Shown here: positions 7,556-34,492 of the stretch, piece after piece | How the letters are laid out: every line of letters starts with the position of its first letter | How positions within the stretch are numbered: position 1 is the first letter of the stretch | NCBI GenBank assembly: GCA_002269645.1 | Contig: NIVC01001941.1 | Span: 1-64,000, forward strand | Direction: 5' to 3' | Length of the DNA stretch: 64,000 nucleotides | Source: Macrostomum lignano | Lineage: Eukaryota | The notes under the pieces: model-generated | What the model saw: only the letters and a program-made list of their open reading frames with translations | Told to the model about the DNA's origin: nothing | The model's database searches: none | Program-made: the position numbers and the translations under genes

Positions 7556-8465
7556 CTAAGTGTTTTTATTTAGTCCTTTAATAAAACCTTTTAATAAAAA
7601 ATTTTACACTACTACTTTTAAACTACTTAGATTCGAACCTAGGTCGCTGCATTAGCAGTCTGGTCTGTTCAGCTCTAGGCTAGCTCTCATCGAAGTTATC
7701 AGTGATGTTGTACCACTTATATAATTCAACACTCACACCAAGTCAGGTAGAGTAAAAAGTCTCACGAAGCAGTTATGACATAATCAATTTCTTGGGCAAG
7801 TCAGTACCAGTGTCTATGAAAGTTTACAATATGGTTACGTAATATAAATTCAGTACTGCGCTATGCTTTCACACTCAAAGCTGTGACGCAATTCAATTCA
7901 GTGTCAAAATTCAGCCAGTACACAGACGATAAATAAAGTGTATTGTGATGCAATCTATTTCAGAATCAGAATTCAACCAGTCAGTTTTTTTCTGCTAGCA
8001 TTCTTACGATGCATTTCAAGTCGAAAGAGCTGCTTGACCTTTGCAAAAAAGCATGTTTTTCGAATATTTAATCCCTTTAGCATCAAGCAATTTCTTAGCC
8101 ACGATGCATGTACTGTCACGGGAAAATTTCTGATCGAACAGTGCAAGTTCGAAGAAAATCGGTTGAGCCATTTTTGCTAAAATCGATCACACACACACAC
8201 ATACACACACACACACATACCGACAGACCATTTTTAGTATATGGACTAGCAATCTACGCCCCCCGTTGGGGAGCCAAAGAAATGCAATACACGTTTTTTT
8301 AATAAGCTACATGTATCCTTGAAATCTTAAAAAATCTCCTGTCAAACCTTGTAAGCCTTGACATGTCAGTAATTCCCCCCCCCACAAGCTTTAACTTATC
8401 AACTTCCCCCCTTGACATCACAGCAATGCCCCCAAAAAGCCTTGGAAATCTAAAAACTGTCAACC

Positions 8466-10610: not shown

Positions 10611-11448
10611 CTTTTTAAAAAGTCTTTTAGTTTTCCTGACGTTGAAAAGCTTTAATTAAAAAAATTATACTCTATGAAAATTCGAACCATCGTCGCTGCA
10701 TTTAGCAGCTCAGTTTGTTCACCTCTAGGCTAGCTCTCATCGTTTTGATAACATCAAATTTTGCACTTATATAATTCAACACTTGAAAATCCAAGCATAG
10801 AGTAAATTACACGAAGCAGTTATGACATAATCAGTTTCTCAGTCAGTCAGTATCAGTTAACAATATGCATGGTTACGCAATTTAAATCAAGTCTGGTGCT
10901 ACGCTTCCACACTGCATTTTCAATTCAAGTCGGAGTTACAATTCAGTTATGATGCAATCTATTTCAGAATCAGAATTCAACCAGTCAGTTTTTTCTCTAG
11001 CATTCTTACAATGCATTTCAAGTCGAAAAGTTTGCTTGACCTTTGCAAAAAAGCATGTTTTTCGAATATTTAATGCCTTTAGCATCGAGCAATTTCTTAG
11101 CCACGATGCATGTACAGTCACGGGAAAATTTCTGATTGAACAGTGCAAGTTCGAACAAAATCGGTCCAGCCATTTTTTCTCTAATCGATCACATAGACAC
11201 AGACAGACCATTTTTAGTATATAGGACTAGCAATCTACGCCCCCCGTTGGGGAGCCAAAGAAATGCAATACACGTTTTTTTAATAAGCTACATGTATCCT
11301 TGAAATCTTAAAAAATCTCCTGTCAAACCTTGTAAGCCTCGACATGTCAGTAATTCCCCCCCACAAGCTTTAACATATCAACTTCCCCCTTGACATCTCA
11401 GCAATGCCCCCAATAAGCCTTGGAAATCTAAAAATATCTGTCAACCTT

Positions 11449-15906: not shown

Positions 15907-17785
15907 TCACCTTGGCCTCTCGGGGTGTGGTCGCAGCGCAATTGGAGGGGTCGCGGGTTCGCTCCCCGCAGCTTGCAGGATCGGCGGTGCGGTCTCCCCG
16001 ACAGGAAAATCGGGCTCTGCATCTGGCGCTACCCGCTTCAGGTCAGTGCAGTGCCGCCTGCAAACTCTGGCGCCCTGCCGAATGGTCATCGAGTCGCCCT
16101 TGACACTCTCGACCAGCCAGGGTGTCCACTCGAACGGAGTCTCGCCCTTGAGCGGATTTAGTCGGCGCCGGAGCACCGTGTCGCCGACTTTGAGCCCATG
16201 CGGTCTCGCCTGCCGTCGCTTGTCCGTGTAGCGCTTGCCCTTTGCCTTGCTGCTGGCGTCCTGCTGTCGGAGCCTCCTGTCTGCGATGGCCACCGGTCTC
16301 GACGGCCTGATTGACGGGATGGCGTCGTTTGGGACGCGACCCAAGAGCAGCTCGGCTGGTGCCCGGTTGGTGGTTCGCTGCGGCGTGCAACGGTAGGCCA
16401 GCAGCCACTCGTCAAGGGCCGCCCTCCAGTCGCGCTTCTGGGCAATGGCAGCTCGTACAACCTTATTGATGGAGCGGTTCAGGCGCTCAGTGATGCCGTT
16501 GGCCTGCGGATGCAGCGGTGTGATGAGACGCTGCCGGATTCCGTAGCTGTCCAGAAAGCCTTTGAACTGGGCCGAGGAGAATGGCGGGCCGTTATCGGTG
16601 ACCAGTACCTGTGGGATGCCGAATCTGGCGAACGAATTCCTCAGCTTGGGAATCAGCGCTTCGGCCGTTGTGGTCTGGACGATCTCGACTTCAGGGAAGC
16701 GCGAGTAGTGGTCAACGCAGACGAGCAGCATGCTGCCTTGAATGGGGCCTAGCAGGTCTGCCCCTAGTGTTAGCCATGCAGCTTTCGGGATCGGCGTCGG
16801 CTTCAGCGGCGCGGCGGTCACGTCGGCCGCGTGCGACGTAGCTGCACAGGCTCGGCAGGCACGCACGAAGAGCTCTGCTTCTGTCTGCATCCTCGGCCAC
16901 CAGACTTTGGTGCTCAAACGGTCAACCGTCTTGCGCAGGCACTGATGACCGCGGTGTGCCAGGTCCAAAACCAGGCGCCGAAGCGCCATTGGAACTACGA
17001 TTCTCTGGCCCCGCAGGAGCACGCCGTCTGCTGCCGATAGCTCATTCCGTAGGGCGTGGAGCGATCGCGTCTCCGCCGACTCGAGGCTCCATCGTCCTGT
17101 CTCCAGCGATCGAATAGCGGCTTGAATTGTTGCATCTTGCAGCGAACTCTCTTGCACTGAGGACAGCGACAGCGCGTTCGGTATGGCCGCCTGGACGATT
17201 GCAGCGATGCAGAGGGTGTCGAGCTCTTCGCCGACATTTCTTCCTCGTGTTGGCAGCGGCTGCCGGCTCAGCACGTCCGCTGGGTTTAGTGGGCCAGGCT
17301 GGTATTCGACTGTAAATTTCATGTGCTGAATGCGCAGCGCCATTCTTTCGATCCTCGGGGGAGGCCTTGAGCCACTGCTGAACAATGCGATGAGCGGCTT
17401 GTGGTCTGTCACCACCGTAAATGTCGGAGCGCCGTGCAGATAGTACTGAAATTTCAAGCAGCCGTATTTGACGGCCAGCGCCTCCTTCTCAGTCTGGGAG
17501 TAGCGCTGCTCAACATCGGACAGCGTCCGGCTGGCGTACGCGACAGGCCGGTTGGTGCCGTCCGCTTGCGTCTGCGTTAGGATCGCGCCCAGGCCCGCTG
17601 GGCCGGCGTCGACGATGAGTTGCGTCGCTAGGCGGTGGTTGAAGAAGGCGAGGGTGCCGCTGGTCGCAATCCGGGTCTTCACGTCGTCAAAAGCTCGTTT
17701 CTCGAGGTCGGTCCATGCCCAGGGCTCGCCTTTCCTAGTCAGATTGCGCAGTGGCCTCGCTACATCCGCCAGCCCGGGGTGAATG
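15907..17785 (-). CDS. Pol: RNase H plus integrase (frameshift-separated from RT)
   Basis: IVDAGPAGLGAIL and YSQTEKEALAV (RNase H); HRGH...CRAC zinc finger; ADLLGP, VTDNGPPF and QANGITER (DDE core). Confidence 0.93.
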
Positions 17786-18701
17786 AGGCCAGATAGTTGA
17801 CCAGGCCTAAGAACGAGCGCACCTCTGTGGCGGTCTTTGGCTCGGCAAATGCATGGATGGCTTCCAACTTGGACTGGGTTGGTCTGACACCTTCACTGGA
17901 CAGCTGCATCCCCATGAACGTGACCTCGGTACGGGCGAGCTTGCATTTTAACGGATTCAGCGTCAGCCCGTGCTGCGCCAGTCGTCGCAGACATGCCTGC
18001 AGGTTGCTGTGGTGCTCCGCCACGCTGTGCCCATACACGATGATGTCGTCGTGAATCCATTTTACTTTCGGGAGTCCAGCTAGCACGGATGACATGACCG
18101 CCTGGAGAATTTCCTGGGCCGTAGACAGTCCCATACAGAGCCGTGTCAGCCGCCGCAGGCCTCGTGGTGTCGAAAAAGTCAGAAGATGGCGGCATTCGTC
18201 GGCGACTGGGATTTGATAAAATGCCTTCGCGATGTCGAGCTCTGAGAATAGCTGCGCTCCTGCCATGTCTCCCGTCACCTCCTCGAATGTCGGGATGGGA
18301 TGCCGCTCTCTGATGACCGACTTGTTCAGGTCTCTCAAGTCCTGCGTAATCCTGATCTCGCCTGGAGTCTGCTTGGGCACGACGACGATGCGGGCTACCC
18401 ACGGACAGGGGCCTTCCACCGGCTCGATGATGCCTTGGTCCTCGAGGCACTGCAGCTCGGCGTCGACTGCCTGTGCGAGATGTATTGGCACCCTTGATGG
18501 GGGATGACAGATCGGCTTGGCTCCCTCCTCCAGGAAGATGCGGGCGGCATAGTTTTTGAGCCTGCCGATTCCGCTGAAGACTTGTGCGTTCTCCGTTAGG
18601 AGTTCGTGCAGGGCCGGTGCCCCGGCGCATGTAGGACGTCCTTTGGGATCCCTGTTAGCATGCTGTCTAGCGAGACCTCGGGAGACGGACGCAGCTGGCA
18701 T
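17760..18701 (-). CDS. Pol: reverse transcriptase
   Basis: PWVARIVVVPK, RITQDLRDLN, FSELDIAKAFYQIP and WIHDDIIVYG (Mag-type xxDD). Confidence 0.93.
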   Translation of the reverse strand: MPAASVSRGLARQHANRDPKGRPTCAGAPALHELLTENAQVFSGIGRLKNYAARIFLEEGAKPICHPPSRVPIHLAQAVDAELQCLEDQGIIEPVEGPCPWVARIVVVPKQTPGEIRITQDLRDLNKSVIRERHPIPTFEEVTGDMAGAQLFSELDIAKAFYQIPVADECRHLLTFSTPRGLRRLTRLCMGLSTAQEILQAVMSSVLAGLPKVKWIHDDIIVYGHSVAEHHSNLQACLRRLAQHGLTLNPLKCKLARTEVTFMGMQLSSEGVRPTQSKLEAIHAFAEPKTATEVRSFLGLVNYLASFTPGWRM

Positions 18702-19911
18702 GCCACCTTGTTCTCCGGGCCGACTCGCAGAATCTGAAGTCTTTCAGCGCTTCTCCGGCCAATGATGCAAGCGCCCTCACCGTCGAGCACCAAGAACGGT
18801 AGTGTCTCGTGGATCTCGAACACGCTGACTTGCAGGTCTGCCTTGCCCAGCAATCTCAGCGGCTCTTGGCTTCCGTATGGGTAGACCTTGTCGCTGGCGG
18901 GCTGCAGCGCGGCTTTTTGCGGCATCCTGTCGTAGGCCGCCCTGTCGATGATGTTGCAGGCCGCGCCGCTGTCGATGAGCACCTTTGTCTTGAGCCCGTT
19001 AATTGTCGCAGGCGTCCAAGTAGAGCCGTAGTTCCTCAGGGTGAATAGCTCGTGCTCGATGGGGTCGTCTTGCAGATATTCGACTCGACCCGGCGGAGCC
19101 TCCTCCTGCGGTTCGTCAACGGTCCTCAGAGGGACTTTAGCTGCTCCTCGACACGCCCGAGCGAAATGACCCATCTTGCCGCAGCGTCGACACGCCTTGT
19201 TACGGGCTGCCTCGCACGTCTGATGCCCTGGTCGCCCGCAGCGATCGCAGTTGATGCCGCTGTCTCTTGCCGCGGCAGCCGGCCTGGTTGTATGGGATGG
19301 TCGGTTACGAGGTGGACGCAGCGCCGCCACATTCGAAGCGGAAGGATGGCCCGTGTCGGCTGCGGCGCCGATCTCCATGGCCTGGGCCTGCTGCTCCGCT
19401 GCCTCCCTCGCTCGGATTCGCTTCAAAACGTCGTCTAAGGAGACATCGTTGAGCTGCAGGAGTTCCCTCCTGATCCTCTCGGACCGGTAATGAGCCACGA
19501 TCTTGTCCCTGATGAGCGAGTCTCGGAGTTCGCCGAACGTACATTGGTCCGCAGCCTTGCGTAGCCGATGATACCAGGCCTCAATTGACTCTCCTTCCTC
19601 CTGCCGGCATATTTCAAACTGGTACCTGAGGAAGACAACGCTGTTCTTTTGGTCGAAGATACCCTGCAACTTTTTGATGAGCTCCTCCGCGGACTCTCCT
19701 TTCTTGACGCCGTTATCGTCCATGAAGTCTTCCAGCTTCTCGCCCGCAGTGTAAACTAAGAGCTCCAGCTGCTGTGTCGCATCTGTGATGCCAGCTGCGC
19801 GTATGTAGCTGTGAACCTTCGCGTCCAGGTTTTCCATCGCTGAGCTCTTGTCAGAGGATCGCCTTCGAGGTCAAAGGCGTCTGGTGCCGCGAGTTGCAGG
19901 GCCTGTGCCAT
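18596..19911 (-). CDS. Gag (two CCHC knuckles) plus aspartic protease
   Basis: CDRCGRPGHQTC and CRRCGKMGHFARAC knuckles; LIDSGA protease. The probable ATG at 19911 (MAQALQLAAPDAFDLEGDP...RWKTWTRRF) is joined by a 1-nt frameshift near 19815. Confidence 0.9.
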
Positions 19912-20057: not shown

Positions 20058-20243
20058 NNNNNNNNNNNNNNNNNNNNNNNNNNNNNNNNNNNNNNNNNNN
20101 NNNNNNNNNNNNNNNNNNNNNNNNNNNNNNNNNNNNNNNNNNNNNNNNNNNNNNNNNNNNNNNNNNNNNNNNNNNNNNNNNNNNNNNNNNNNNNNNNNNN
20201 NNNNNNNNNNNNNNNNNNNNNNNNNNNNNNNNNNNNNNNNNNN
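20058..20243. other. Assembly gap (186 N)
   Basis: Run of N truncating the 5' LTR. Confidence 1.
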
Positions 20244-20572: not shown

Positions 20573-21687
20573 TTATTTTCTGTCTTGATATGGTAGAAGA
20601 AACAGAAACACTGCTGCGTTAAGTCCACTGACAACAAGGTAGCTGATAAAACAAATACTATTTTTCTGTTTAATACAGAACTCAACGCAGTCGAAAAAGA
20701 TCTTAGGGCTTCGTTCACTTCGCCTTGATTGCCTTGGAGAAACAACGGTCAGGAAGTGTGAACGCGATGAGGATGAGCATCTGAGCCATGAGGAAACAGA
20801 CCGATAGCGGGATCGTGTTCATGGACTTCGGAGCCGACTGGGACGCGATCAGCACGTACAGAGTCATGGACATGATGATGGCGATGGACAGTTCACCGGG
20901 TCGCTCTTGTCACCAGCCAGGAACATGATGCTTGCGAGCAGACAGCAGCTCGAACGGACAATCACCGCACAGCGTAGTACATCCACCTGCGCTTCAGGTG
21001 GAACTTGATCTCGGTGCAAGGAAACGATTGACCATTGATAACATTAGTGCGATTGTGCTGCGATAGCTCGTTCAAATTCCACTCCCCAACTTGGTAGGAC
21101 ACTCCGTCTATCTTGTTGATCGATAAGGTGCTTAAGCACTCGAGTCAGAAGTGATGAAATAGTGCAAAGCTGATGTCTGATGTCAACTGCGCATGCAGAC
21201 CGAATCACCAGGTACACGTAGGCGTACACGAGGCCGGAGGGAAACACCGTCACTTCCAAGAGGCCAGAATTTCGAATGTCGTACAAGCTCTCCTCCTTGC
21301 TGTTCCAGAAGCCAATGTCTGGCAGCCACAGGCTGTTCCGCTCCACTCGCAGTTGATCCAATTGGCTTTCGGATGCGTTCCAAGCCAGTCTTGGTCAGTC
21401 CAGCTGATGAAGGTCCAACCGGACCACTCCAGCAGCTCGTTCTCTCCGAGTCCGTAAATGGTCTTGATCGATATGACTATCTCGACGTTCGTATTGTAGC
21501 CAAAGTTTTTGGGAGACAGTATGACGTGGCACTGCGGCAGCGACTGCGGCCCGATGGACTCCGCCAGAGCCCGGCATGCTGCCTTGTCTGCGTTGGAGGC
21601 TGGACTGATGGCGGTCAAGCGTAAAAAAGCGCTGCTCCCCATTACCAGCAACAGTCGAAAGATTACAGACCTAAGACAGGTGAGCAT
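20573..21687 (-). pseudogene. Atypical nAChR-like Cys-loop channel, copy A (disrupted, or low-quality sequence)
   Basis: Homologous to 22265-23434 (CRALAESIGPQSLPQCH, WLPDIGFWNS, M1-M3, M4 CFISYLVVSGLNAAVF). Multiple 1-2-nt deletions and a deletion inside the Cys-loop (CAVDIR-HQLC). Confidence 0.8.
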
Positions 21688-22264: not shown

Positions 22265-23434
22265 ATGCAGCACCTGATTCAGCCAGCCAGATTCATTCTG
22301 TTGCACTGTTTTCTGATTGTCGTCCCCCCGCCGTCGGCCACCATCGATCCGGCCTCGAACGTCAACGTAGCCGCGTGCCGCTCACTGGCCGAGTCCATCG
22401 GACCGCAGTCGCTGCCGCAGTGCCACGTCATGCTGTCGCCAAGCCATTTCGGCCACGAAAACAGCGTCGCTGTTAAAATACTACTGAAGACCATCTACGG
22501 TCTGGACGACAAGGAGCTGCTGGAGTTCTCTGCCTGGATTGAGCTGACATGGACCGACCCTCGGCTGGCCTGGAACTCATCAGCTAGAGGCAGTCCACGG
22601 TACATGCGCATCGACAGGAACAGTCTGTGGCTTCCTGACATCGGCTTTCTGAATTCCAAGGGCGAGATGTTCGACATTAGAAACGCGAAATTCTCTGACG
22701 TAGTTCTTAGTGCATCAGGAGAAGCGTTTATTTACGCATTTTGCGTGGTCCAATTCGCATGCGCCCTTGATGTGAGATCCTTCCCGTTTGACAGCCAGGT
22801 TTGCGCAACCCAACTGGCCACAGTTACATCTGACGTAGCTGCACTCAACTTTTCGGCAAGGGTGAGCTACAACTACTCGGAAGACAGTGGACTCGAGCTG
22901 TACCAAGTTGGCGAATGGATCCTGCAGTCTGTTGATCATAAATCATACTTTTTTACTGCAAATGGCGCTATCTACCCGGTAGTCAACATCAAGTTCCACC
23001 TGAAGCGCAGGTGGATGTACTACGCTGTGCTGGTGATTGTCCCGTTCGAGCTGCTGTCGCTGCTCGCAAGCATCATGTTCCTGGCTGGTGACAAGAGCGA
23101 CCCGGTGAACCTGTCCATCGCCATCATCATGTCCATGACTCTGTACGTGCTGATCGCGTCCCAGTCGGCTCCGAAGTCCATGAACACGATCCCGCTAGTC
23201 GGTCTGTTCCTCATGGCTCAGATGCTCATCCTCATCGCGTTCACCTTCATCGCTGCTTTCCCTGGCAGACAGCAGGTTGCGAGCCGTGAAAGTGCAAAGG
23301 TGACGAAAAGCTGCTGGACCTTCTTGTTTCGCCACCGGGCTGTTGTGAGCAGCTGCGCCTACCTGCTGCTCAGCGGGGTGAACGCGCTCGTTTTCATCTA
23401 TGTCTGGCCCGCCCACCTGAGCGCCGATAAGTAG
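22265..23434 (+). CDS. Intronless atypical nicotinic-receptor-like (Cys-loop) ligand-gated ion channel, copy B, 389 aa
   Basis: Signal peptide, WTDPRLAW, WLPD, C-x13-C loop CALDVRSFPFDSQVC, GEW motif, four TM helices with a very short M3-M4 loop; no vicinal Cys in loop C. Confidence 0.92.
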   Translation: MQHLIQPARFILLHCFLIVVPPPSATIDPASNVNVAACRSLAESIGPQSLPQCHVMLSPSHFGHENSVAVKILLKTIYGLDDKELLEFSAWIELTWTDPRLAWNSSARGSPRYMRIDRNSLWLPDIGFLNSKGEMFDIRNAKFSDVVLSASGEAFIYAFCVVQFACALDVRSFPFDSQVCATQLATVTSDVAALNFSARVSYNYSEDSGLELYQVGEWILQSVDHKSYFFTANGAIYPVVNIKFHLKRRWMYYAVLVIVPFELLSLLASIMFLAGDKSDPVNLSIAIIMSMTLYVLIASQSAPKSMNTIPLVGLFLMAQMLILIAFTFIAAFPGRQQVASRESAKVTKSCWTFLFRHRAVVSSCAYLLLSGVNALVFIYVWPAHLSADK

Positions 23435-24336
23435 CTGCACTCTTAGCCACGATTTTTTCTTAAATAGAGCAAAAAGTTTGTCAATTTCTGACAAAAGTGA
23501 GATCGGATATCGATATTAACTTTTTTAACGAACTGTTTGACTTGAAATAGTACTATTGAGGAACTCTCAGCAACAGTAGTCCATTTAGCAAGTTATTGCT
23601 ACTGTGCCGTCAACTACTACGAGTACTACTATACCACTACAATTTAAGCTTGATTGCACCGACAATTGAATTCTCGGTTCGTTCATTTACCCAAAAATAC
23701 AACACTACGAGAGTATGCACCGCGTGCACTAAATCCTACCTACGTTGATTGTCATTGCTGTGCTGTAATAGCTGGTTCTTTGCATGTTATATTGTTTCAA
23801 TTGTTTCAATATGGCCCACCTGTCCGATCAACCAATCAAAGTTTGCAATTACAGTATAGTATTTTGATCTTGATCTATTTTGATCTAAAAAACTGCTGCA
23901 AATATTCAAACAAGCATGCAGCTCTCTACCATTTTACGCGAACAAATAAAGAAACTTTATCTGTTACATAAGAAAACATGCAGCAGGTTCTGACGGGTCC
24001 TTGCATGAATTAGTTTTAGATTTATTTTACTAATCGGGGTCGTATCACTAAAACGTGTATTATTGCAATATTAGTTAGTTAATGCTTTATTCGACTTTGT
24101 ACTAAGTTAAGAAACAGTACAAATGAGATGCGCGCTAACTACGAGCATATTAGCTGAAATATAAATAAGCCATTGGAATCGTGCATTCGAAAAATTATTT
24201 CCGAACTTCAAAGATTGAGTTGACTGAGTTGAAGCATTTGTTTTGCAAAATTCTGTCACCATGATTTCTCATTGAAACATTCACCACTAATTGCCGAAAG
24301 TTTTGGAGTTCAAATTGTCCTTTAAAAGCTACTTGG

Positions 24337-25429
24337 TCATATAAACAAAAATGCGCATGCATTGCAGACACTTGCTGCAATGTAGCAGCCACGTTTCTGT
24401 GTTGCAATAGAACTGTCTTCCAGCCTCGCTTTCTATGCTCAGCCTCCGGTTTGTGAGCAGCTGATCTATCTGTTTTGTTCTGAGCGGCTGCGATGAAGGT
24501 GAACGCGATGAGGATGGACTTCGGAGCCGACTGGGACGCGATCAGCACGTACAGAGTCATGGACATGATGATGGCGATGGACAGGTTCACCGGGTCGCTC
24601 TTATCACCAGCCAGGAACATGATGCTTGCGAGCAGCGACAGCAGCTCGAACGGGACAATCACCAGCACCATATAATACGTGAACCTTCGCTTCAGGTGAA
24701 GGAAAAGCCTCACAATTTTGAATTACTGCCCACCAATAGAGTCGATCATGTCCGTTTGGGAAATATTTTTCAAGTCCCATTCACTGACAGTTGACGAAGA
24801 CTGTTCCGAATCAATATTCTCTTCAAATATATTTTGCACTGTAATATTGAACACAGTCAAGTCCGAAGATATCGTGCCGATTTGAATGGAGCAGACTTGG
24901 AAACTTGAGCAGACTTGCGCGTCGAATGGAAACTTGGCGACTTGTATGATGCAGGCAAATTGGACTACAAAGAAGATAGAGAGCTTAACCTCACAATTTG
25001 GGAACACTGTGGCGTCCTGAAATTTTGTATTTCGTACGTCATACGAAAGCTCTCAGCTTTCCTTCGTATTCCAGAATCCAACATCCGGCAGCCACGAGCT
25101 GTTTTTCTCCACCTTAGCTGCTTCGGTGGACTTTCCGTTGAGTTCCAGGCTAGCCGGGGGTCAGTCCAGGTCATCTGAATACATCCAGAAAACTCCTGAA
25201 GCTCCTCGTCCGGGCCGTATATAGTCTTCACATGGAGCATCAAGTCAACAACACAATATTTGTACCGTAGCCACAGTGCTTGGGTGACAGCTTGACGCGA
25301 CTGCGCACCGATGGACTCCGACAGAGCGCGACAGGCGGCCACTTCAGCGTCGGCAGCCCATTCAGTGCTGGCTGATACCAGCAAGACTGCGTGGCTCAGA
25401 AGAATCCGGAATTGCGCCAGTGAAGACAT
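24337..25429 (-). pseudogene. Atypical nAChR-like Cys-loop channel, copy C (pseudogene)
   Basis: WTDPRLAWN, CIIQVAKFPFDAQVC and EW are present. Several frameshifts, and a 48-bp deletion near 24516 removes MNTIPLVGLFLMAQML (M2-M3 loop and M3). Confidence 0.85.
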
Positions 25430-25689
25430 GGTAAGTTAAAGACTTTCATTCTGGTGTTCTGCTTATAGATGACACGAACGCCAGCCATTACTCTCCCAGT
25501 CTCTAATTCATGCAGGGTCGGCAAAGGTTCCAACTCTCCTCTCCTCTCTCTCCTCTCATGTCGGGCAACATGCGGCCCGCAGAGCCTCTCTATCCGACCC
25601 TCGGATCTTTTGAAACTTCACAATGTACTGCATCCGGCCCACAAGCAATCAAGCAATCCGGCCCACTCAATTTTTATATCGCTTCTCAG

Positions 25690-26400
25690 CACTCTTCTCT
25701 CTAATCTCCTCTCTACTCTCTTCCTCTCTCCTCTCTTCTCTTCTCTATCATGTCTTCTCTCCTCTCTCCTCTCATCTCCTCTCCTCCTCTCTTCTCTCTC
25801 CTCTCTCCTCTCTCCTCTCTTCTCTTCTCTATCATGTCTTCTCTCCTCTCTCCTCTCATCTCCTCTCCTCCTCTCTTCTCTCTCCTCTCTCCTCTCCTCC
25901 TCTCTTCTCTCTCCTCTCTCCTCTCTCCTCTCTCCTCTCATCTCCTCTCCTCCTCTCCTCTCCTCCTCTCCTCTCCTCCTCTCCTCCTCTCTCCTCTCTC
26001 CTCTCTCCTCTCTCCTCTCTCCTCTCTTCTCTCTCCTCTCATCTCCTCTCCTCCTCTCCTCATCTCCTCTCTCCTCTCTCCTCTCTCCTCTCTCCTCTCA
26101 TCTCCTCTCCTCCTCTCCTCTCCTCCTCTCCTCCTCTCTTCTCTCTCCTCTCATCTCCTCTCCTCCTCTCTTCTCTCTCCTCTCATCTCCTCTCCTCCTC
26201 TCCTCATCTCCTCTCTCCTCCTCTCCTCTCCTCCTCTCCTCCTCTCTTCTCTCTCCTCTATTCTCACTCATTTTCTCTCCTCCTGTCCTCTCTTTTCTCC
26301 CTCCTTTCTCCACTCCTCTCTTCTCCTTTATTATCTCACCTCTCCTTTCTCTTACCTCCCTTCTCTCTTCTTTATTTCCTCTCCTCTCTCCCCTCCTCTG
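25690..26400. repeat. CT-rich (CTCTC/CTC) microsatellite
   Basis: Pure pyrimidine low-complexity tract. Confidence 0.95.
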
Positions 26401-28029
26401 GGCCCACAGTCAGTCTCTAGGTTCTCTATCTGGCTCGTCAAATATTTAAATTTCCTATTTGTCACATTATTCATTAAGTTTTCAGTAGAAAATCATCCAA
26501 CAGTAGTTCAGCTTCTGCCCACTTGTTAAGCTTGGTGGCTCTGATGTTTGCAACATGTGATCTGGCCCTGTAGTCTGTGGGCGTGTGTTTGAAAACTGCT
26601 GCATGTTTGACCAGTAGGTTTGCTTTGGCGCAGTCTGCTATGGATGAGGCTGACTGTTGACCAGCACATTCAATAATTGGCATATGGTAAATGGATTAAA
26701 AATTACGAGCGCTATGCTTGGACCTTAGCAACAGAATCCAGTGGAAATAGATGTACAAGCCGTAAGAGCCGTAAGAGTTTTTGCTGCGTCAAAAGTCAAG
26801 ACCATCGGCTAACTTTTTCTTGCGCACCTTCGCAAACGATAATCAAGTCACCAACCCTCCGGACCATCGAGATATTCATAAGCGCCAGTGCATTCAATAC
26901 AGCCCTGTGCGCCAACCAGCGCTGCGCCTCAGCGCAGCCTTGCCAAGCCTCCAAATTTCACCAGCACATCTCTGCATCAGCTCTGACTTCTTTGGTCACT
27001 GGTCTTTACTCAGGCGGATCCTTCCAGGGTGGCACCCGGTGACTATGGACACCCTGTGCAAGTTTCTCTGAGTTCGCTGATCAAGCCTCGGCAGTAGGCA
27101 AGCCTCAACTGCTGGACATCCTCAGCTAGTCTCTCCAGAATTCCGTCATCACCCCGACGCTGTCGGTACCTTCAACAGGTGGCACTGTGGGCAATAGAGC
27201 AATACCTTTAATGAGTAATACGATCAATTACAGTGTATAGCAATCTTTATATTTTACCTATTCGGGCGACGTAAATAATTAATCAGGTTTGAAAAAAGCT
27301 ATAGAAAAGCGAAGACGCACTGCATGATGACTGGGTTCATATGAGCGGCACTTGCTCTGAATTTTAAATCCATACTACTCACCAAATGAGTAGAAAGCTT
27401 TAAAAAATCGGCCACTTTGAGTGTACACGTTTTGGCTTGGGAACACGTCTTTTCAGTTGATACTTTTAAGTTTATATCGGCAAAAGTAGGAAAGTAGATG
27501 ATGAGTTGTAATGCAGGTGATCCCGTAAAAGCTAGTGGAAATTGCGTAGAAGATAAGTATGCATTGAGTTCAGTGAGTGAACAGAAAAGTACTCCTTTCA
27601 ACAAGTAATTCTTTATAGTTGTCAATAGTCTTTGCTTGAAGAACTTTAACCAGACCTGACAAGACATCTCCATTCAAACGGAGCATTTCTTTTGATCGGA
27701 TGGCTGCCGCAACACAGCTGTTATTTGGACATAACCAAACTTGGCAAATAGACTCGTCCTAAGAACACTGTGACAGTAGCATTTAGTGTCTTGAGAGCAG
27801 AACCCGATGCCAGTGCAAATATTGCTAAGACACTGGGATCATATATGACGAGAGAATGAGCTCTGCGCCATCCTGAGCAGATCTTCATCGTTAAGCCCGG
27901 AACTCTTTTCTGTCGCCGTTCATAATTCATATCTCGTGTCATTTATACTAACATAACATGAACATACACCAGCCCCGCCTGTCCCCAAAGGGAAGACTCA
28001 GTTCAATCCACTATCCACTATTGGGAACA

Positions 28030-28375
28030 TTTTTATTAGAGGCAGGCGCTGTGTGCACCTAAGTGACATTGTCACACAACCGGCGAGAGGCATTGCTGCC
28101 CATTCCGCCGACTCCCCTGAGCAGGCACACAAGCGCGGATACGTACACAGTCATACGCGCAGGCACACACTCACACAGGAGTGTACAGCGGCCCTAACTT
28201 TATTTATCGTTAGGCATGTACACTTCACTGTGCCTTGGGGTCGGCCCTCAAGGCCGTTAATTGCACGAGCAGAGCCAAGCCGCGATTCCAATTTAGCCCC
28301 AAATTAATGTGACTGCACTTGGAATCGAACCTGGACCGCTGACACGGGCCAGGCTACGGCCCACTGACTATCGGG
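28030..28375 (-). mobile_element. tRNA-derived SINE copy
   Basis: B-box GGTTCGATTCC (plus ggaatcgaacc at 28321). Body shared with 34670-34830, 39285-39575, 40400-40530 and 62815-63105; tail ...CTCTAATAAAAA. Confidence 0.75.
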
Positions 28376-28932
28376 AATTAACAGAATTTGATCCAATGTA
28401 ATCATATTCTCCATATATTTGGACAATTGGGCAAAACTGGTTTGCAACTGCGAAAAAAAGGCTATTCCATAGAGAATCGTCCTTTAATGTTCATGGAGAT
28501 AGATGTACTCAGCAGACTAAAAAATACTGCGAAAACTAAGGACTCATTATTTGCCAATAGAAATGTCATTAATTGATGGGTGAAACAAGCCGTGACGAGC
28601 TGAGTGCCCCCCCCCCCCCTAGTCTAGAACAACCAGCATGCAGATAATTATTTACCTTGACAACGAGAGCGAGATCTGCAGCTCTGAAATGGAAATGCGG
28701 AAATGTTTTACCAAGCCAAACCTCTCGAGGAAGCTTGTGGAGATGAAAATGCAGCAAATAAAAGTTTAGAACCAACGCGTTAATCCCTCATCTCTATCCA
28801 TATATAGCACTGAGAGCAGAGCAGTTTAGCATGAATTAACTCGGGAAAGCAAAAAACTCTCACAAGACGCAAGATAAAAGCTCGACAAACGCAAATATTT
28901 GAGTTCAATACTTATCTACCGTTAATAAGCAT

Positions 28933-30087
28933 ATGAACCATCCCGGTGGCAACAAAATGTCTTCAACAGCAACATTACTGCTGCCTGTGCTGCTCTTGCT
29001 TGCGACTGTTTCAGAGTCAAACTCAGCAGCCAGCACTGATGCGGCCACTGCTGCGTGTCAAGCGCTGTCGGAGTCCATCGGTCCGCAGTCGCTGGCGCAG
29101 TGCCACACGTTGATGTACCCCAGCCAGTTCGGCTACCAAACGAACGTCAGCGTGCACATCTTGCTGAAAACTATCTACGGCCTGGACGAGAAGGAGCTGC
29201 TGGAGTTCTCCGCTTGGTTCCAGATTTCATGGACTGACCCTCGGCTGGCCTGGAATTCTTCAGCACCAGGCAGCCCACAGTACTTGCGAGTCGACCGGGG
29301 CAGCGTGTGGCTACCAGACGTTGGCTTCCTTAATTCGAAGGGCGAGATGTTTGACCTCCGAAACACCAAGTTCACTGACGCAGTAATTTTTCCTACTGGG
29401 GAAGTCGGCATTTACACATTCGCAGTTGTTCAGTTTGCCTGCGCCATCGATGTGAGATACTTCCCATTCGACACTCAGCTGTGCGCCACCCAACTCGGCA
29501 CCATATCGTCAGACACTTCCGGGTTCAAATTGTCGGTGTCTATCAGCTACAACAAATCAGAGAACCTGGGCCTGGATTTGTACCAGGTCGGCGAGTGGGA
29601 GCTGATAAGCGTTACTCATGAGCTTTCCCGATATGTGGCCGCTGGTGACAGCCTTTATGTCGCCAACATCAAGTTCCACCTGAAGCGCAAGTGGATGTAC
29701 TACGCTGTGCTGGTGATTGTCCCGTTCGAGCTGCTGTCGCTGCTCGCAAGCATCATGTTCCTGGCTGGTGACAAGAGCGACCCGGTGAACCTGTCCATCG
29801 CCATCATCATGTCCATGACTCTGTACGTGCTGATCGCGTCCCAGTCGGCTCCGAAGTCCATGAACACGATCCCGCTAGTCGGCCTGTTCCTCATGGCTCA
29901 GATGCTCATCCTCATCGCGTTCACCTTCATCGCTGCTCTAAAAGTCACTTATTCGTCTGCGACCTCGGAGGCGCCATCTAAACTGAAGAAACTGATTTTG
30001 TTTCTGTCAAAGCACAAAAATGTTGTCTGCTTTATAAGCTACATCAGCCTTACTATCATTAATATTATTGTGTTTGTATACATCTGA
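28933..30087 (+). CDS. Intronless atypical nAChR-like Cys-loop channel, copy D, ~376-384 aa
   Basis: Signal peptide (ATG 28933 or 28957), WLPDVGFLNS, CAIDVRYFPFDTQLC, GEW, M1-M4. Confidence 0.92.
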   Translation: MNHPGGNKMSSTATLLLPVLLLLATVSESNSAASTDAATAACQALSESIGPQSLAQCHTLMYPSQFGYQTNVSVHILLKTIYGLDEKELLEFSAWFQISWTDPRLAWNSSAPGSPQYLRVDRGSVWLPDVGFLNSKGEMFDLRNTKFTDAVIFPTGEVGIYTFAVVQFACAIDVRYFPFDTQLCATQLGTISSDTSGFKLSVSISYNKSENLGLDLYQVGEWELISVTHELSRYVAAGDSLYVANIKFHLKRKWMYYAVLVIVPFELLSLLASIMFLAGDKSDPVNLSIAIIMSMTLYVLIASQSAPKSMNTIPLVGLFLMAQMLILIAFTFIAALKVTYSSATSEAPSKLKKLILFLSKHKNVVCFISYISLTIINIIVFVYI

Positions 30088-30481
30088 CTTCAATTCATTT
30101 CTTTGCGCGCAAGAACCAACTGGTTTTATTGTTCTATGGTTTGGCTGTGAATCAGACGCTGCAACATCTCTTGACTTTGAAATTAAGAGAAAAACATCTC
30201 ATCCCTTCAGCCAAGATTCACTATGCGCTGGATTACTATGCCATGGGTTCTTTTCACAACGCTATTTTCCTCAATGCTTCCTCATTTATTTCGTAGAACG
30301 TGATATAATTAATTTTTTTTATTTTCATAAAGATTCATCATGTGTACATTTATGTAGAGATTCCACATTACTACGATTGTGCTTCAAGGCAATAGTGCAG
30401 CCTCATTAAAGCAGCTATTATCGCTAATGCGTATGTTGAGAAGATAAGTCAACTGACCCTGGGTCTAAAAGATGTGCCTAA

Positions 30482-30953
30482 GGGAACACGAGAATTTCCC
30501 GCCGGAAGTTTTCCCGCCGAGGCTTGCCCGCCGATATTTCCCCGCTGGAGGTTTCCCCGCTGGAGGTTTTCCCGCTGGAGGTTTCCCCGCTGGAGGTTTC
30601 CCCGCTGGAGGTTTCCCCGCTGGAGGTTTCCCCGCTGGAGGTTTCCGCGCTGAAGGTTTCCCGCTGGAGGTTTCCCCGCTGGAGGTTTCCGCGCTGGAGG
30701 TTTCCCGCTGGAGGTTTCCCCGCTGGAGGTTTCCCCGCTGGAGGTTTCCCCGCTGGAGGTTTCCCCGCTGGAGGTTTCCCCGCCGAGATTTCCCCGCAGG
30801 GTTTTTCCTGTCGGAATCTCAAGTCAAATCCAGTCTATAGACAATGCTGGACTAGATTAGAACTAGCCTAAGACTAGATTTCAAATCCAATTGGAAAAAC
30901 CCTGCGGGAAAACCTCCGCGGAAAAACTTCCTGCAGGAAACTCTCATAGACCC
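30482..30953. mobile_element. MITE-like element with an 8-bp target-site duplication and internal 15-bp repeats
   Basis: GTGCCTAA flanks both ends (30474-30481 and 30954-30961). Imperfect TIRs GGGaacacGAGAaTTTCC and GGGtctatGAGAgTTTCC; internal (CCCGCTGGAGGTTTC)n at 30540-30780. Confidence 0.7.
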
Positions 30954-32037
30954 GTGCCTAATAGCCTTCAAAAAACACAGAAATAGTAGCCAGGAGAGCA
31001 AACTGCCTATTTTAAGGCTAACCATAGCTAGAAATTGCCCTTCATTCGCAGCCTCATCGTTTTTTGCTTAACTGGGTGTCACAGATGCCGTTCTGGAAAA
31101 TTCCATCAACTAGAACCTCTAGTTTTTGAGGTAATTTGTATTTAAGCATGCACCATCCTAGGTTGGGCGCAGTTTACGTAACAATAGCATCATCATTAAC
31201 ATTCTTATTATTAATCTAAATATACTAATATTATTACTATTTCTACGATTATTATTGAAAACACGCTGAGGGTACTGGTATTTAATGATATTACTCGAGG
31301 CAAAAATTCAAAAAGCTAGTGAATAAAAATACTTTTCGACCTAACGGGAGTGAAATCTCGTGTTATTCATGCTTGTTTTCTTCTGTAACAATCTGAAGCC
31401 TCATGAAGTTGCTTTCTAGCTTGTGTCATGTCTTTGATGCAGTTTTCTAGGTAGCATTTCCATCATGTCTTCTTGAGTCATTAGGTAAAATATTTAATCT
31501 TCTGCAGTAAGGTTTTTTTAATTCGGAACTTTATCTGGGATTTCCTGTTCAAGTTTATCACGGAGAAGCACGATACAGTAAAAGTTCCAACTGCACTTAA
31601 AAAGTAACTGAACTTCACTTTCTACTCCCCACATGGCACTTTGAGCAGGTCAGCTGTTCTCCTAAGGGATCTTTGGTCTCGCAGTTCTCATTGTGTCGCA
31701 ACCCAGTTCATGGTTCGAACTCTTCTATCGGTAGAGATGTAGAACGTCCTCAATTTTCGGGACCAGAAAACTCTGCATTTGCTATCCGAGTGTTCAGATA
31801 ATAAGAAGCTGTCAATTACATTGCTTAATGACAGGAAAGTGTCATTTATTTTAATGTTGTATGGATGTTGTCTTTAGGCTTACTATGAGTAGTAACTATG
31901 AAATAAACTGCAATTGTACCAAGCAATATTATTATTAATCTGAGTAAGTGTAAAAAACGCTAGTCGAACTCTGTTGGCGGCTGAAGGCCTCAAATTTCTA
32001 AATTTTTATTGCATACTGCGAGACGAGCGCCAGCAAG

Positions 32038-33177
32038 ATGCGAACCTGTAAATGTATTCTGCCTCTGCTTCTACTAGTTCACAGTATCATGCGCTCAAGC
32101 GCCATCGACCCGGCAACAAACGCTGACGTGCCTGCGTGCCGCGCACTGGCGGAGTCCATCAGACCGCAGGCGCTGCCGCAGTGCCACGTCTTGCTGTCTC
32201 CGAGCTACTTCGGCTACCAAACAGACGTCAGGGTGTTGATTTATCTGAATACCATCTACGGCCTGGACGAAAAGGAGCTGCTGGAGTTCTCTGGCTGGAT
32301 TTGGATTTCCTGGACTGACCCTCGACTCGCCTGGAACTCGTCATCGCCGGGCAGCCCGCACCAGCTGCGTCTCCACAGAAACAGCCTCTGGCTACCGGAC
32401 GTCGAGTTCCTCAACTCCAAGGGCGAAATGTTCGCCGATGCTCTATTGTTTCCAACCGGAGAAGCTAGCATTTACACATTCGCAGTGGTGCAGTTCGCAT
32501 GCGCCATCGATGGGAGATACTTCCCCTTCGACAGTCAGCTGTGCGCTATTCAAGTCAGCACAGGAACGTCCGACGTCACGCATTTTAACCTATCGGTGTC
32601 TGTTTACTACAACAGCTCCACGTACGATGGGCTGGAACTTTCCCTGGTTGGCGAGTGGGATCTGGAGAAAGTGACTGGTGAACAGTCCAGAGAAAAGTCA
32701 CTTGACTTCAACTTTTATATGGTGGATTTACAATTCCACCTGAAGCGCAGGTGGATGTACTACGCTGTGCTGGTGATTGTCCCGTTCCAGCTGCTGTCGC
32801 TGCTCGCAAGCATCATGTTCCTGGCTGGTGACAAGAGCGACCCGGTGAACCTGTCCATCGCCATCATCATGTCCATGACTCTGTACGTGCTGATCGCGTC
32901 CCAGTCGGCTCCGAAGTCCATGAACACGATCCTGTTCGGTCTGTTCCTCATGATACAAATGCTCATCCTCATCGCGTTCACCTTCATTTCCGCTCTGAAA
33001 GCACACCCCTCATCTGCGCCCTCGGATGCGCCCTCAACGATCAGAAGACTTGGAAGGTTTTTAGCGAGTCACAAGAATGCAATCTGCTTCATCAGCTACA
33101 TCCTGCTCACGGCTGCAAACATAATCGCGCTTGGTTGGAACGCTGGAGCAGGATTTCCGAGTCAACAGAGGCTTTAA
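32038..33177 (+). CDS. Intronless atypical nAChR-like Cys-loop channel, copy E, 379 aa
   Basis: WLPDVEFLNS, CAIDGRYFPFDSQLC, GEW, M1-M4. Carries a 7-aa ECD deletion relative to D, and TILFG replaces TIPLVG. Confidence 0.9.
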   Translation: MRTCKCILPLLLLVHSIMRSSAIDPATNADVPACRALAESIRPQALPQCHVLLSPSYFGYQTDVRVLIYLNTIYGLDEKELLEFSGWIWISWTDPRLAWNSSSPGSPHQLRLHRNSLWLPDVEFLNSKGEMFADALLFPTGEASIYTFAVVQFACAIDGRYFPFDSQLCAIQVSTGTSDVTHFNLSVSVYYNSSTYDGLELSLVGEWDLEKVTGEQSREKSLDFNFYMVDLQFHLKRRWMYYAVLVIVPFQLLSLLASIMFLAGDKSDPVNLSIAIIMSMTLYVLIASQSAPKSMNTILFGLFLMIQMLILIAFTFISALKAHPSSAPSDAPSTIRRLGRFLASHKNAICFISYILLTAANIIALGWNAGAGFPSQQRL

Positions 33178-33724: not shown

Positions 33725-34492
33725 ATTGTCCATAGTTTTGGAGGCAGACAATGGTAGACTGTGCCTATGGTTTTGGAGGCAGACAATGGTCGATTGTGTC
33801 TATGGTTTTGGAGGCAGACAATGGTCGATTGTGTCTATGGTTTTGGAGGCAGACAATGGTAGATTGTGTCTATGGTTTTGGAGGCAGACAATGGTCGATT
33901 GTGTCTATGGTTTTGGAGCCAGACAATGGTCGATTGTGTCTATGGTTTTGGAGGCAGACAATGGTCGATTGTGTCTATGGTTTTGGAGGCAGACAATGGT
34001 AGATTGTGTCTATGGTTTTGGAGGCAGACAATGGTCGATTGTGTCAATGGTTTTGGAGGCAGACAATGGTAGATTGTGTCTATGGTTTTGGAGGCAGACA
34101 ATGGTCGATTGTGTCTATGGTTTTGGAGGCAGACAATGGTCGATTGTGTCTATGGTTTTGGAGGCAGACAATGGTCGATTGTGTCTATGGTTTTGGAGGC
34201 AGACAATGGTCGATTGTGTCTATGGTTTTGGAGGCAGACAATGGTCGATTGTGTCTATGGTTTTGGAGGCAGACAATGGTAGATTGTGTCTATGGTTTTG
34301 GAGGCAGACAATGGTAGATTGTGTCTATGGTTTTGGAGGCAGACAATGGTCGATTGTGTCTATGGTTTTGGAGGCAGACAATGGTAGATTGTGTCTATGG
34401 TTTTGGAGGCAGACAATGGTAGATTGTGTCTATGGTTTTGGAGGCAGACAATGGTAGATTGTGTCTATGGTTTTGGAGGCAGACAATGGTAT
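33725..34492. repeat. 35-bp satellite (TTTTGGAGGCAGACAATGGTCGATTGTGTCTATGG)n
   Basis: About 22 highly homogeneous copies. Confidence 0.97.

What the first reader, a model, noticed from the sequence alone, without database searches (positions are those of the whole stretch)
22985..32995. Constant pore cassette on variable sensor domains: M1-M3 is near-identical at the DNA level across paralogs
Seen: 22985-23257 (B) and 29665-29937 (D) differ at only about 2 of 273 nt by eye (AGG/AAG, GGT/GGC). Their ECDs differ at many amino acids and many synonymous positions. The same block is near-identical in E (about 32735-32920) and in the inverted copies A (about 20760-21010) and C (about 24490-24670). 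Identity starts at the ECD/M1 boundary and stops at the end of M3; M4 diverges again. Purifying selection alone would not freeze silent sites. Inference: domain-restricted gene conversion homogenises the pore and assembly module while ligand-binding domains diversify, a variable/constant design that could keep subunits compatible for combinatorial heteropentamers.
Basis: partly seen in the sequence, partly recalled or inferred. Interest (0 to 1): 0.85.

Follow-up and report, generated by a model that had tools for sequence, protein, structure and literature searches.

The report
Shared pore block by gene conversion
Five neighbouring ion-channel genes of a Macrostomum flatworm share an almost letter-identical 150-270-base stretch coding the channel pore while the rest of each gene has diverged to saturation; repeated copying between the genes (gene conversion) explains this best, a process well known in other receptor clusters that I found no report of for this receptor family.

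Summary
22985-23257 and 29665-29937 differ at exactly 2 of 273 nt. The same block occurs in gene E and in two inverted, broken copies (A, C). Between B and D, synonymous divergence is 0.015 in M1-M3, against 1.29 in the extracellular domain and saturation after M3. Non-coding flanks share no similarity. The tract groups B with D (16:2:0 informative sites), whereas the ECD and M4 group D with E. Small patches inside the block in E and C keep background-level divergence. Pseudogenes carry the tract too. A related tandem array in a nematode has a protein-identical M2 with freely diverged silent sites. No Rfam match and no unusual RNA fold were found.

Best explanation: repeated, short-tract interlocus gene conversion among five linked, intronless nAChR-like Cys-loop subunit genes, three intact and two decayed. 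The genome is Macrostomum lignano or a sibling (a neighbouring P450 is 97% identical).

Its adaptive reading (a constant pore kept for combinatorial heteropentamers) is untested, and the pseudogene copies weaken it. Regional conversion of this type is documented for protocadherins and TLR1/TLR6, so this is a clean new member of a known kind. Raw-read verification is still needed.

The parts
20591..21687 (-). Copy A: decayed or error-laden Cys-loop subunit gene. It has frameshifts and an in-frame stop, and the FPFD core of the Cys-loop is missing. It lies about 350-500 nt from the N gap at 20058-20243.
20753..21009 (-). Tract in A. There are 0 substitutions against B over the five-copy core, but 5-7 one-base deletions, which are probably consensus errors.
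22265..23434 (+). Gene B: intact intronless ORF of 389 aa. Neur_chan_LBD E = 8e-29. Cys-loop at 22760-22804.
22985..23257 (+). Tract in B, from pre-M1 to the end of M3: M1 about 23012-23086, M2 about 23099-23173, M3 about 23195-23257. It differs from D at 2 of 273 nt.
23026..23178 (+). Five-copy core (M1 through M2 to the start of the M2-M3 loop), near-identical in A, B, C, D and E.
24195..25429 (-). Copy C: pseudogene with at least 1 frameshift, 2 in-frame stops and a 48-nt in-frame deletion that removes the M2-M3 loop and the start of M3.
24487..24698 (-). Tract in C. The core, about 24514-24668, has 2 substitutions. The 3' piece is 24487-24516. The 5' part, 24669-24698, is at background divergence. 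C forms a 185-nt inverted repeat with B, with 1332 nt between the arms.
28933..30087 (+). Gene D: intact intronless ORF of 384 aa. Cys-loop at 29440-29484.
29665..29937 (+). Tract in D.
32038..33177 (+). Gene E: intact intronless ORF of 379 aa. Cys-loop at 32500-32544.
32734..32987 (+). Tract in E. It has 1 substitution over about 200 nt, then an unconverted patch at about 32933-32958 (6 substitutions plus a 3-nt indel), then about 27 more near-identical nt.

Best explanation
The 12.6-kb cluster (20.6-33.2 kb) holds five old paralogs of an orphan, intronless, short-loop nAChR-type Cys-loop channel subunit. Three are intact (B, D, E) and two are decayed (A, C). Their orientation is A(-) B(+) C(-) D(+) E(+). 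The genome is Macrostomum lignano or a sibling species. The M1-M3 coding block is kept near-identical by repeated short-tract interlocus (ectopic) gene conversion, that is, homologous-recombination repair that uses a neighbouring paralog as template. Shown: the tract is roughly 100-fold younger at silent sites than the rest of the genes. Its genealogy differs from that of the flanks. Individual copies retain unconverted patches. Pseudogenes take part. Non-coding flanks share nothing. Inferred: the tract ends are set mainly by heterology, because the loop-C/beta10 segment upstream and the M3-M4 loop downstream are the most diverged and indel-rich parts of the genes. The TM block evolves slowly at the protein level and so kept enough identity for conversion to sustain itself, while the other parts escaped. 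Selection against conversion of the ligand-binding loops may add to this but is not needed. By alignment to nAChR beta4/alpha7, the pore carries an acidic -1' residue, so it is likely cation-selective. The subunits lack the loop-B Trp and the loop-C Cys-Cys, so they are unlikely to bind acetylcholine as alpha subunits do.
For: Silent-site contrast: dS 0.015 against 1.29 for B/D, and 0.125-0.144 against 0.79-1.05 for pairs with E. Same-codon counts are 81/1 against 71/54, p = 2e-13, and the identical run is 192 nt against at most 47 in 10,000 shuffles. Discordance: informative sites BD|E: BE|D: DE|B are 57:50:79 in the ECD, 19:20:49 after M3, and 16:2:0 in the tract (p = 2e-6). Patchiness: E has 6 substitutions plus a 3-nt indel within 29 columns, inside otherwise identical sequence. 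The C 5' part has about 10 differences in 32 columns. So the block is not intrinsically slow at the DNA level. Pseudogenes A and C carry the core with 0-2 substitutions. There is no similarity in the 5' or 3' non-coding flanks of B, D and E. Control: in the Mesorhabditis spiculigera tandem array of a related subfamily, the M2 exon is 90-100% identical as protein, yet same/different synonymous codons are 456/457. GC3 is 0.83-0.88 in the tract, 0.61-0.69 in the ECD and 0.49-0.76 after M3 in the same genes. The geometry favours conversion: copies lie 1.3-12 kb apart, in direct and inverted orientation. Family: Neur_chan_LBD E = 1e-26 to 1e-32; the best solved relatives are nAChR beta4, beta2 and alpha7, E about 1e-35. 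Organism: P450 97% identical to M. lignano A0A1I8I3R8.
Against: Raw reads could not be examined. If the window comes from Mlig_3_7, that assembly was Canu PacBio polished with Pilon using short reads (PMC5730564). Such polishing can erase small differences between near-identical repeats, so 99.3% identity may be somewhat inflated. Copy A shows uncorrected one-base deletions inside the tract, so local consensus quality is uneven. The GC3 rise is weak evidence for biased conversion, because other genes in the window reach GC3 0.81-0.91. No orthologous cluster from a second species was available to show concerted evolution directly. The 5' and 3' tract limits nearly coincide in four copies, which heterology explains but which selection, or a single ancestral chimeric event followed by spread, would also explain.
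Confidence: 0.85

Rival explanations
1. Conversion supplies the mechanism, but the restriction to M1-M3 is adaptive. On this reading, selection keeps one pore and membrane module on variable sensor domains so that subunits co-assemble freely.
For: The tract limits coincide with domain limits (pre-M1 to the end of M3) in A, B, D and E, within about 10 nt. dN is highest in the loop-F/loop-C part of the ECD, at 0.46-0.55. Similar arguments were made for TLR1/TLR6 (PMC2077338) and for protocadherins (PMC1852091).
Against: Two of the five carriers are pseudogenes. ECD dN/dS is 0.1-0.6, with no positive-selection signal. The N-terminal ECD also shows reduced dS of 0.39-0.86. The flanking segments are the most diverged and indel-rich parts of the genes, so heterology alone predicts the same limits. 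There are no expression or co-assembly data.
Confidence: 0.2
2. Assembly or polishing artefact: reads from paralogs were mixed, so the identity is not in the genome.
For: The window has a scaffold gap (20058-20243). Copy A has one-base deletions typical of an unpolished consensus. M. lignano assemblies were Pilon-polished with short reads. The UniProt fragments P0003, P0153 and P0154 all stop at the start of the tract, as if assemblers break there.
Against: Short reads cannot cross-map between sequences that are about 25% diverged, so polishing could only sharpen identity that already existed. The tract is in frame in three intact ORFs. Its limits and internal patches differ between copies, and private substitutions survive in D, E and C. 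The neighbouring two-exon P450 is free of frameshifts.
Confidence: 0.05
3. The block is conserved at the nucleic-acid level without conversion, because it is an embedded RNA element, an antisense gene, a small-RNA target or a mutational cold spot.
For: An antisense ORF of 64-75 aa runs through the tract. The inverted copies B/C and A/B could form long hairpins if co-transcribed.
Against: There is no Rfam match at E <= 1. The RNA fold z-score is 0.02. The antisense ORF has no significant Pfam match. Unconverted patches in E and C show background divergence inside the block. The tract genealogy conflicts with that of the flanks. Pseudogenes share the block.
Confidence: 0.04
4. One-off chimeric origin: each gene acquired the common TM block once, through unequal crossing-over or segment shuffling, and the block is simply young. 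There would be no ongoing conversion.
For: The outer limits are nearly the same in four copies.
Against: Divergence levels within the tract are graded: B/D 2 differences, A 0 substitutions, E 16, C about 21. Patches are nested in E and C. These point to several events of different age and extent. In any case this is mechanistically a form of gene conversion.
Confidence: 0.06

Closest known systems
Regional gene conversion in clustered protocadherin variable exons (fugu and zebrafish; PMC1852091, citing Noonan et al. 2004)
   Same: Both are tandem receptor paralogs with a divergent distal ligand or recognition part. In both, a membrane-proximal part is >99% identical at the DNA level, silent sites included, and GC3 is raised in the converted part. 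Both are interpreted as repeated regional conversion.
   Different: The protein family differs (cadherins). The protocadherin tracts cover EC4-EC6 through TM and are longer. Protocadherins also have truly shared constant exons joined by splicing. Here every gene has its own copy within one continuous ORF.
TLR1/TLR6 gene conversion (PMC2077338)
   Same: Conversion is confined to the part that encodes the transmembrane and signalling module, while the ligand-binding part diverges. Conversion limits nearly coincide across independent events.
   Different: TLR1/TLR6 involve two genes and a roughly 900-nt tract, and conversion was shown across nine species. Here there are five copies, two of them pseudogenes, a 150-270-nt tract and a single genome.
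Intronless, tandemly arrayed nAChR-like expansions in lophotrochozoans (PMC6896357)
   Same: Both are intronless Cys-loop subunit genes in tandem arrays, and both include inactive copies.
   Different: That study reports no gene conversion or concerted evolution ('gene conversion' 0 hits). It states that intronless nAChR genes were found only in molluscs. The present family has a very short M3-M4 loop, and its closest named relative is a Macrostomum protein at 43-44% identity.
Cephalopod chemotactile receptors (review PMC11526382)
   Same: These are nAChR-derived cation channels that no longer bind ACh and form homo- and heteropentamers, with variation in the ligand pocket. They are a plausible functional analogy for orphan subunits that lack the loop-B Trp and the loop-C Cys-Cys.
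   Different: No phylogenetic link was tested. Diversifying selection is documented for CRs and is not detected here. I found no report of TM-restricted conversion for CRs.
Mesorhabditis spiculigera tandem pLGIC array (locus L002, P0004)
   Same: It belongs to a related subfamily (profile E = 1e-64) and has the same M2/M2-M3 motif, ...SIA..MSMT....I..Q..PK....PL.G. About 9-10 tandem paralogs share a very conserved M2 protein sequence.
   Different: Silent sites in M2 are freely diverged (456 same and 457 different codons; 75-90% nt identity), and the genes have introns. The array serves as the negative control.

Membership tests
Cys-loop / pentameric ligand-gated ion channel superfamily | Extracellular ligand-binding domain (Pfam PF02931) above the curated cut-off | tested here: met
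   B 101 bits, D 112 bits and E 93 bits, against a cut-off of 26.
Cys-loop / pentameric ligand-gated ion channel superfamily | Cys-loop C-x13-C containing the FPFD motif | tested here: met
   CALDVRSFPFDSQVC (B), CAIDVRYFPFDTQLC (D), CAIDGRYFPFDSQLC (E). Copy A lacks the FPFD core.
Cys-loop / pentameric ligand-gated ion channel superfamily | M1-M3 membrane domain homologous to that of known channels | tested here: met
   PF02932 is only sub-threshold (24.7 and 21.1 bits against 28.1). However, the profile alignment to nAChR beta4 (6pv7_B) runs through M1-M3, profile positions 67-350, E = 1e-35.
Cys-loop / pentameric ligand-gated ion channel superfamily | C-terminal M4 helix | tested here: inconclusive
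   Hydrophobic C-terminal stretches of 20-23 residues are visible in the B, D and E tails. No TM predictor or structure model was run.
Acetylcholine-binding nAChR alpha-type subunit | Loop-B Trp and vicinal Cys-Cys in loop C | tested here: not met
   the position aligned to the loop-B Trp (beta4 FRSWTYD) reads ATVTSD, GTISSD or STGTSD. There is no CC pair in the loop-C region.
Cation-selective branch of pLGICs | Acidic -1' residue at the cytoplasmic mouth of M2 and no P-A-R anion motif | tested here: met
   S-D-P aligns with G-E-K of beta4, giving Asp at -1'. Ion selectivity itself is not testable here.
Interlocus gene conversion / regional concerted evolution | Tract with strongly reduced synonymous divergence relative to flanking coding sequence | tested here: met
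Interlocus gene conversion / regional concerted evolution | Genealogy of the tract discordant with that of the flanks | tested here: met
   16:2:0 for (B,D) in the tract, against (D,E) favoured in the ECD (79 against 57 and 50) and after M3 (49 against 19 and 20).
Interlocus gene conversion / regional concerted evolution | Raised GC3 in the converted region (GC-biased conversion) | tested here: inconclusive
   0.83-0.88 in the tract against 0.49-0.76 elsewhere in the same genes. Unrelated genes in the window reach 0.81-0.91.
Interlocus gene conversion / regional concerted evolution | In the tract, paralogs within a species are more alike than orthologs between species | not testable with these tools
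   No second Macrostomum genome could be reached. Searches found nothing.
Interlocus gene conversion / regional concerted evolution | Identity confirmed in raw reads that span unique flanks | not testable with these tools
   No read data available.
Protocadherin-type variable/constant gene organisation (shared constant exons) | One shared constant exon set spliced to many variable exons | tested here: not met
   B, D and E are each a single continuous ORF holding its own copy of the block.

The most novel reading that the evidence does not exclude
The M1-M3 block is a selected 'constant region'. On this reading, conversion is tolerated or favoured only there, so that a repertoire of variable-ECD subunits shares one pore and membrane interface and can co-assemble combinatorially as chemosensory channels. 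That would be a pLGIC counterpart of protocadherin or immune-receptor V/C design. The pseudogene copies would act as sequence reservoirs.
Probability: 0.15. Interest if true: 0.75.

Novelty: new member of a known kind. Interest (0 to 1): 0.45.

Why it matters
This is an unusually clean case of domain-limited concerted evolution: silent-site divergence differs about 100-fold across boundaries sharp to within about 10 nt, in five copies and in both orientations. It appears to be the first such case noted for a Cys-loop receptor cluster, since three full-text searches found none.

There are practical consequences. Trees or orthology calls built on the TM region of such families will be wrong. Short reads and transcript assemblers will break or mis-map at the block. 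The cluster seems unannotated: an exhaustive search of 1.84 billion representative proteins found nothing closer than a truncated paralog at 43-44% identity.

Biologically, B, D and E are natural chimeras, with different extracellular domains on the same pore. That makes them a ready-made set for studying ECD-TMD coupling and ligand specificity in an orphan flatworm channel family. The pseudogene participants show that conversion can also import defects into working genes.

Tried and rejected
1. Embedded structured RNA: no Rfam hit at E <= 1 over 20-34 kb, and the fold z-score of the tract is 0.02. Rejected.
2. Antisense ORF as the conserved unit: no significant Pfam match, and a protein constraint would not freeze all three codon positions anyway. 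Rejected.
3. Whole-gene recent duplication with a fast-evolving ECD: the non-coding flanks of B, D and E share nothing, and M4 is saturated too. Rejected.
4. Protein-level constraint alone: rejected by the Mesorhabditis control and by the unconverted patches.
5. GC3 as proof of biased conversion: the tract is higher than the rest of the same genes, but other genes in the window are equally GC3-rich. I keep it only as weak support.
6. Looking for the tract or the genes elsewhere: an exact 45-mer in metagenome contigs gave 0 hits. A protein-pattern scan of metagenomes confirmed none. D and P0003 are not on record in the contig index. Word-index protein searches found only distant nAChRs plus one truncated M. 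lignano paralog. This led nowhere.
7. Positive selection on the ECD: pairwise dN/dS is 0.1-0.6. With three sequences no site test is possible.
Full report
**What is in the window.** The window is eukaryotic. It holds a Ty3/gypsy-type retroelement (gag-protease-RT-RNaseH-integrase, 15907-19837, minus strand), a scaffold gap (N run 20058-20243) and very many mini- and microsatellite arrays. A two-exon cytochrome P450 at 49819-51407 is 97% identical to Macrostomum lignano A0A1I8I3R8. The sequence therefore comes from that free-living flatworm or a sibling species.

Between 20.6 and 33.2 kb lie five copies of one gene family, and there are no others in the window:
- A: minus strand, about 20591-21687.
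- B: 22265-23434, 389 aa.
- C: minus strand, about 24195-25429.
- D: 28933-30087, 384 aa.
- E: 32038-33177, 379 aa.

B, D and E are continuous, intronless ORFs. They match the neurotransmitter-gated channel ligand-binding domain well above Pfam's cut-off. They have a canonical C-x13-C Cys-loop with FPFD. Their profile aligns through M1-M3 to nAChR beta4, beta2 and alpha7 structures at E about 1e-35. The M3-M4 linker is only about 25-30 residues. The -1' position of M2 is Asp, which suggests a cationic pore (inference from the alignment). The loop-B Trp and the loop-C Cys-Cys are absent. These are therefore orphan, non-alpha-like subunits.

A and C are broken. C has a frameshift, two in-frame stops and a 48-nt deletion in the M2-M3 loop and M3. 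A has several frameshifts and a stop, and lacks the FPFD core.

**Closest relatives.** The closest named relative is a truncated M. lignano UniProt protein at 43-44% identity. An exhaustive search of 1.84 billion representative proteins found nothing closer, so the cluster appears to be unannotated. Similar short-loop, intronless genes exist on two Logan contigs.

**Checking the observation.** The two stated intervals differ at exactly 2 of 273 nt.

| Pair | dS, ECD | dS, M1-M3 | After M3 |
|---|---|---|---|
| B/D | 1.29 | 0.015 | saturated |
| B/E | 1.05 | 0.125 | saturated |
| D/E | 0.79 | 0.144 | saturated |

These are Nei-Gojobori estimates. I then restricted the comparison to codons that encode the same amino acid. 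B and D use the same codon 71 times and a different one 54 times in the ECD, but 81 times against 1 in the tract (Fisher p = 2e-13). The longest identical run is 192 nt, against at most 47 in 10,000 shuffles of the mismatches.

In a five-copy alignment every one of the ten pairs reaches 0.97-1.00 identity over the core and 0.3-0.87 elsewhere.

**What it is.** Five lines of evidence point to interlocus gene conversion rather than any form of constraint.

1. The tract has a different genealogy from its surroundings. Informative sites favour (D,E) in the ECD (79 against 57 and 50) and after M3 (49 against 19 and 20). In the tract they favour (B,D) by 16:2:0, p about 2e-6.
2. The block is not intrinsically slow at the DNA level. 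E keeps a patch at about 32933-32958 with 6 substitutions and a 3-nt indel in 29 columns, flanked on both sides by identical sequence. The 5' part of the block in C has about 10 differences in 32 columns. Both are background-level divergence. This mosaic is what several short conversion events of different extent would leave.
3. The decayed copies A and C carry the core with 0-2 substitutions. Homogenisation therefore does not depend on selection on the protein.
4. The 5' and 3' non-coding flanks of B, D and E share no detectable similarity. The genes are old and only the tract is young.
5. A natural control exists. The nematode Mesorhabditis spiculigera has 9-10 tandem paralogs of a related subfamily whose M2 exon is 90-100% identical as protein. 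Their silent sites are half diverged (456 same against 457 different codons) and nucleotide identity is 75-90%. Protein constraint on this very segment does not freeze silent sites.

GC3 is higher in the tract (0.83-0.88) than in the rest of the same genes (0.49-0.76), as expected under GC-biased conversion. Unrelated genes in the window are equally GC3-rich, so I count this as weak support only.

**How it most likely works.** The copies lie 1.3-12 kb apart in both orientations. For example, the B and C tracts form a 185-nt inverted repeat with 1332 nt between the arms. This geometry favours intrachromosomal repair from a paralogous template.

The outer limits nearly coincide in A, B, D and E. 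They fall at pre-M1 (NIKFHLKRR) and at the end of M3 (FTFIAA). The segments just outside, the loop-C/beta10 region and the M3-M4 linker, are the most diverged and indel-rich parts of the genes. I infer that heterology stops heteroduplex extension there. I also infer that the slowly evolving membrane block kept enough identity for conversion to sustain itself while the rest escaped. This is inference, not demonstration.

Selection for a common pore remains possible. Three results argue against needing it:
- Two of the five carriers are pseudogenes.
- ECD dN/dS is 0.1-0.6 throughout, with no sign of positive selection.
- The N-terminal ECD has reduced dS as well (0.39-0.86, against 1.2-2.3 further on). 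This hints at older exchanges there, so the sensor is not uniformly variable.

**Rivals.**

*Nucleic-acid-level function.* This finds no support. There is no Rfam match, the RNA fold z-score is 0.02, and the antisense ORF has no significant Pfam match.

*Assembly or polishing artefact.* This cannot be excluded without reads.
- For it: the published M. lignano assembly was Canu PacBio polished with Pilon and scaffolded with SSPACE (PMC5730564). That fits the odd-sized N gap. It also fits the one-base deletions, without any substitution, in copy A close to that gap.
- Against it: short-read polishing can only sharpen identity that already exists. It cannot create identity from sequence that is about 25% diverged. 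The copy-specific limits, patches and private substitutions argue that the pattern is real.
- Consequence: the true identity may be a little below 99.3%.

**Comparison with what is known.** Regional gene conversion that homogenises the membrane-proximal part of tandem receptor genes, while the distal recognition part diverges, is well documented. Fugu and zebrafish protocadherin variable exons show >99% identity in the 3' region, raised GC3 and divergent EC1-EC3 (PMC1852091). TLR1/TLR6 are converted over LRR16-19, the TM segment and TIR in nine mammals (PMC2077338). Further cases came up. Intronless tandem nAChR-like expansions are known in molluscs, but that study does not mention conversion (PMC6896357). 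Cephalopod chemotactile receptors are a possible functional analogy (PMC11526382). Full-text searches that combined gene conversion with ligand-gated channels, nicotinic receptors, chemotactile receptors or Macrostomum found no prior report for this family.

**Verdict.** The adaptive 'constant pore, variable sensor' design is untested. This is a clean new member of a known kind and of moderate interest. Its value is as a natural chimera set and as a caution for phylogeny and assembly. Read-level confirmation and a sister-species comparison are the decisive next steps.

Noticed in passing
window 20753-21009 (copy A tract), next to the N gap at 20058-20243: Inside the shared tract, copy A shows no substitutions but 5-7 one-base deletions relative to B and D. 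This looks like unpolished long-read consensus near a contig end rather than neutral decay, so some of A's frameshifts may be errors.
   Followed up: partly
proteins P0003, P0153, P0154 (M. lignano UniProt A0A1I8I4U5, A0A1I8HUS3, A0A1I8HYE3): The three closest annotated relatives are fragments. All of them stop at ...YYAVLILLPFEM, exactly where the shared core begins. One possibility is that transcript or genome assemblers break at a repeated block, which would mean more family members carry it.
   Followed up: no
L002 (Mesorhabditis spiculigera CATQJA010002634.1:332212-362893): About 9-10 tandem pLGIC paralogs are fused into two gene models (for example P0004, 1215 aa with 9 matched stretches). 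The M2 protein is near-identical, yet silent sites are freely diverged. I used this array as the negative control.
   Followed up: yes
window 22370-22560, 29050-29240, 32130-32320 (N-terminal ECD): Synonymous divergence is lower in the N-terminal ECD (dS 0.39-0.86) than in the mid and C-terminal ECD (1.2-2.3). All ten copy pairs, pseudogenes included, are 76-87% identical over the ACRALAESIGPQSLPQCH segment. This may be an older or partial conversion tract.
   Followed up: partly
window 15907-19837, minus strand: A Ty3/gypsy-type retroelement with gag (zinc knuckle), aspartyl protease, RT, RNase H and integrase ORFs lies immediately upstream of the gap and the channel cluster.
   Followed up: partly
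window 49819-51407, minus strand: A two-exon CYP2-like cytochrome P450 with a short intron near 50.9 kb. It is 97% identical to M. lignano A0A1I8I3R8 and 86% to a second M. lignano P450. This identifies the source organism.
   Followed up: yes
window 40590-41657 (+) and 61193-62464 (-): There is a C2-domain ORF and an FSIP1-family ORF. The FSIP1-family ORF overlaps a 32-nt tandem array (61693-62406), so part of that ORF may be repeat-derived.
   Followed up: no
window-wide, e.g. 602-3359, 4813-7556, 9374-10612, 25705-26327, 30498-30797, 33727-34490, 55619-57477: There are dozens of mini- and microsatellite arrays with periods of 3-92 nt. Several sit between the channel genes, and they create long spurious ORFs on both strands.
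   Followed up: no
window 22997-23181 vs 24514-24698; 20805-20891 vs 23111-23197: The tracts of neighbouring genes form inverted repeats (185 nt at 95% complementarity with 1.3 kb between the arms; 87 nt at 100% with 2.2 kb). Crossing-over between them would invert the intervening DNA and swap the M4 and 3' ends. Read-through transcripts could fold into long hairpins.
   Followed up: no
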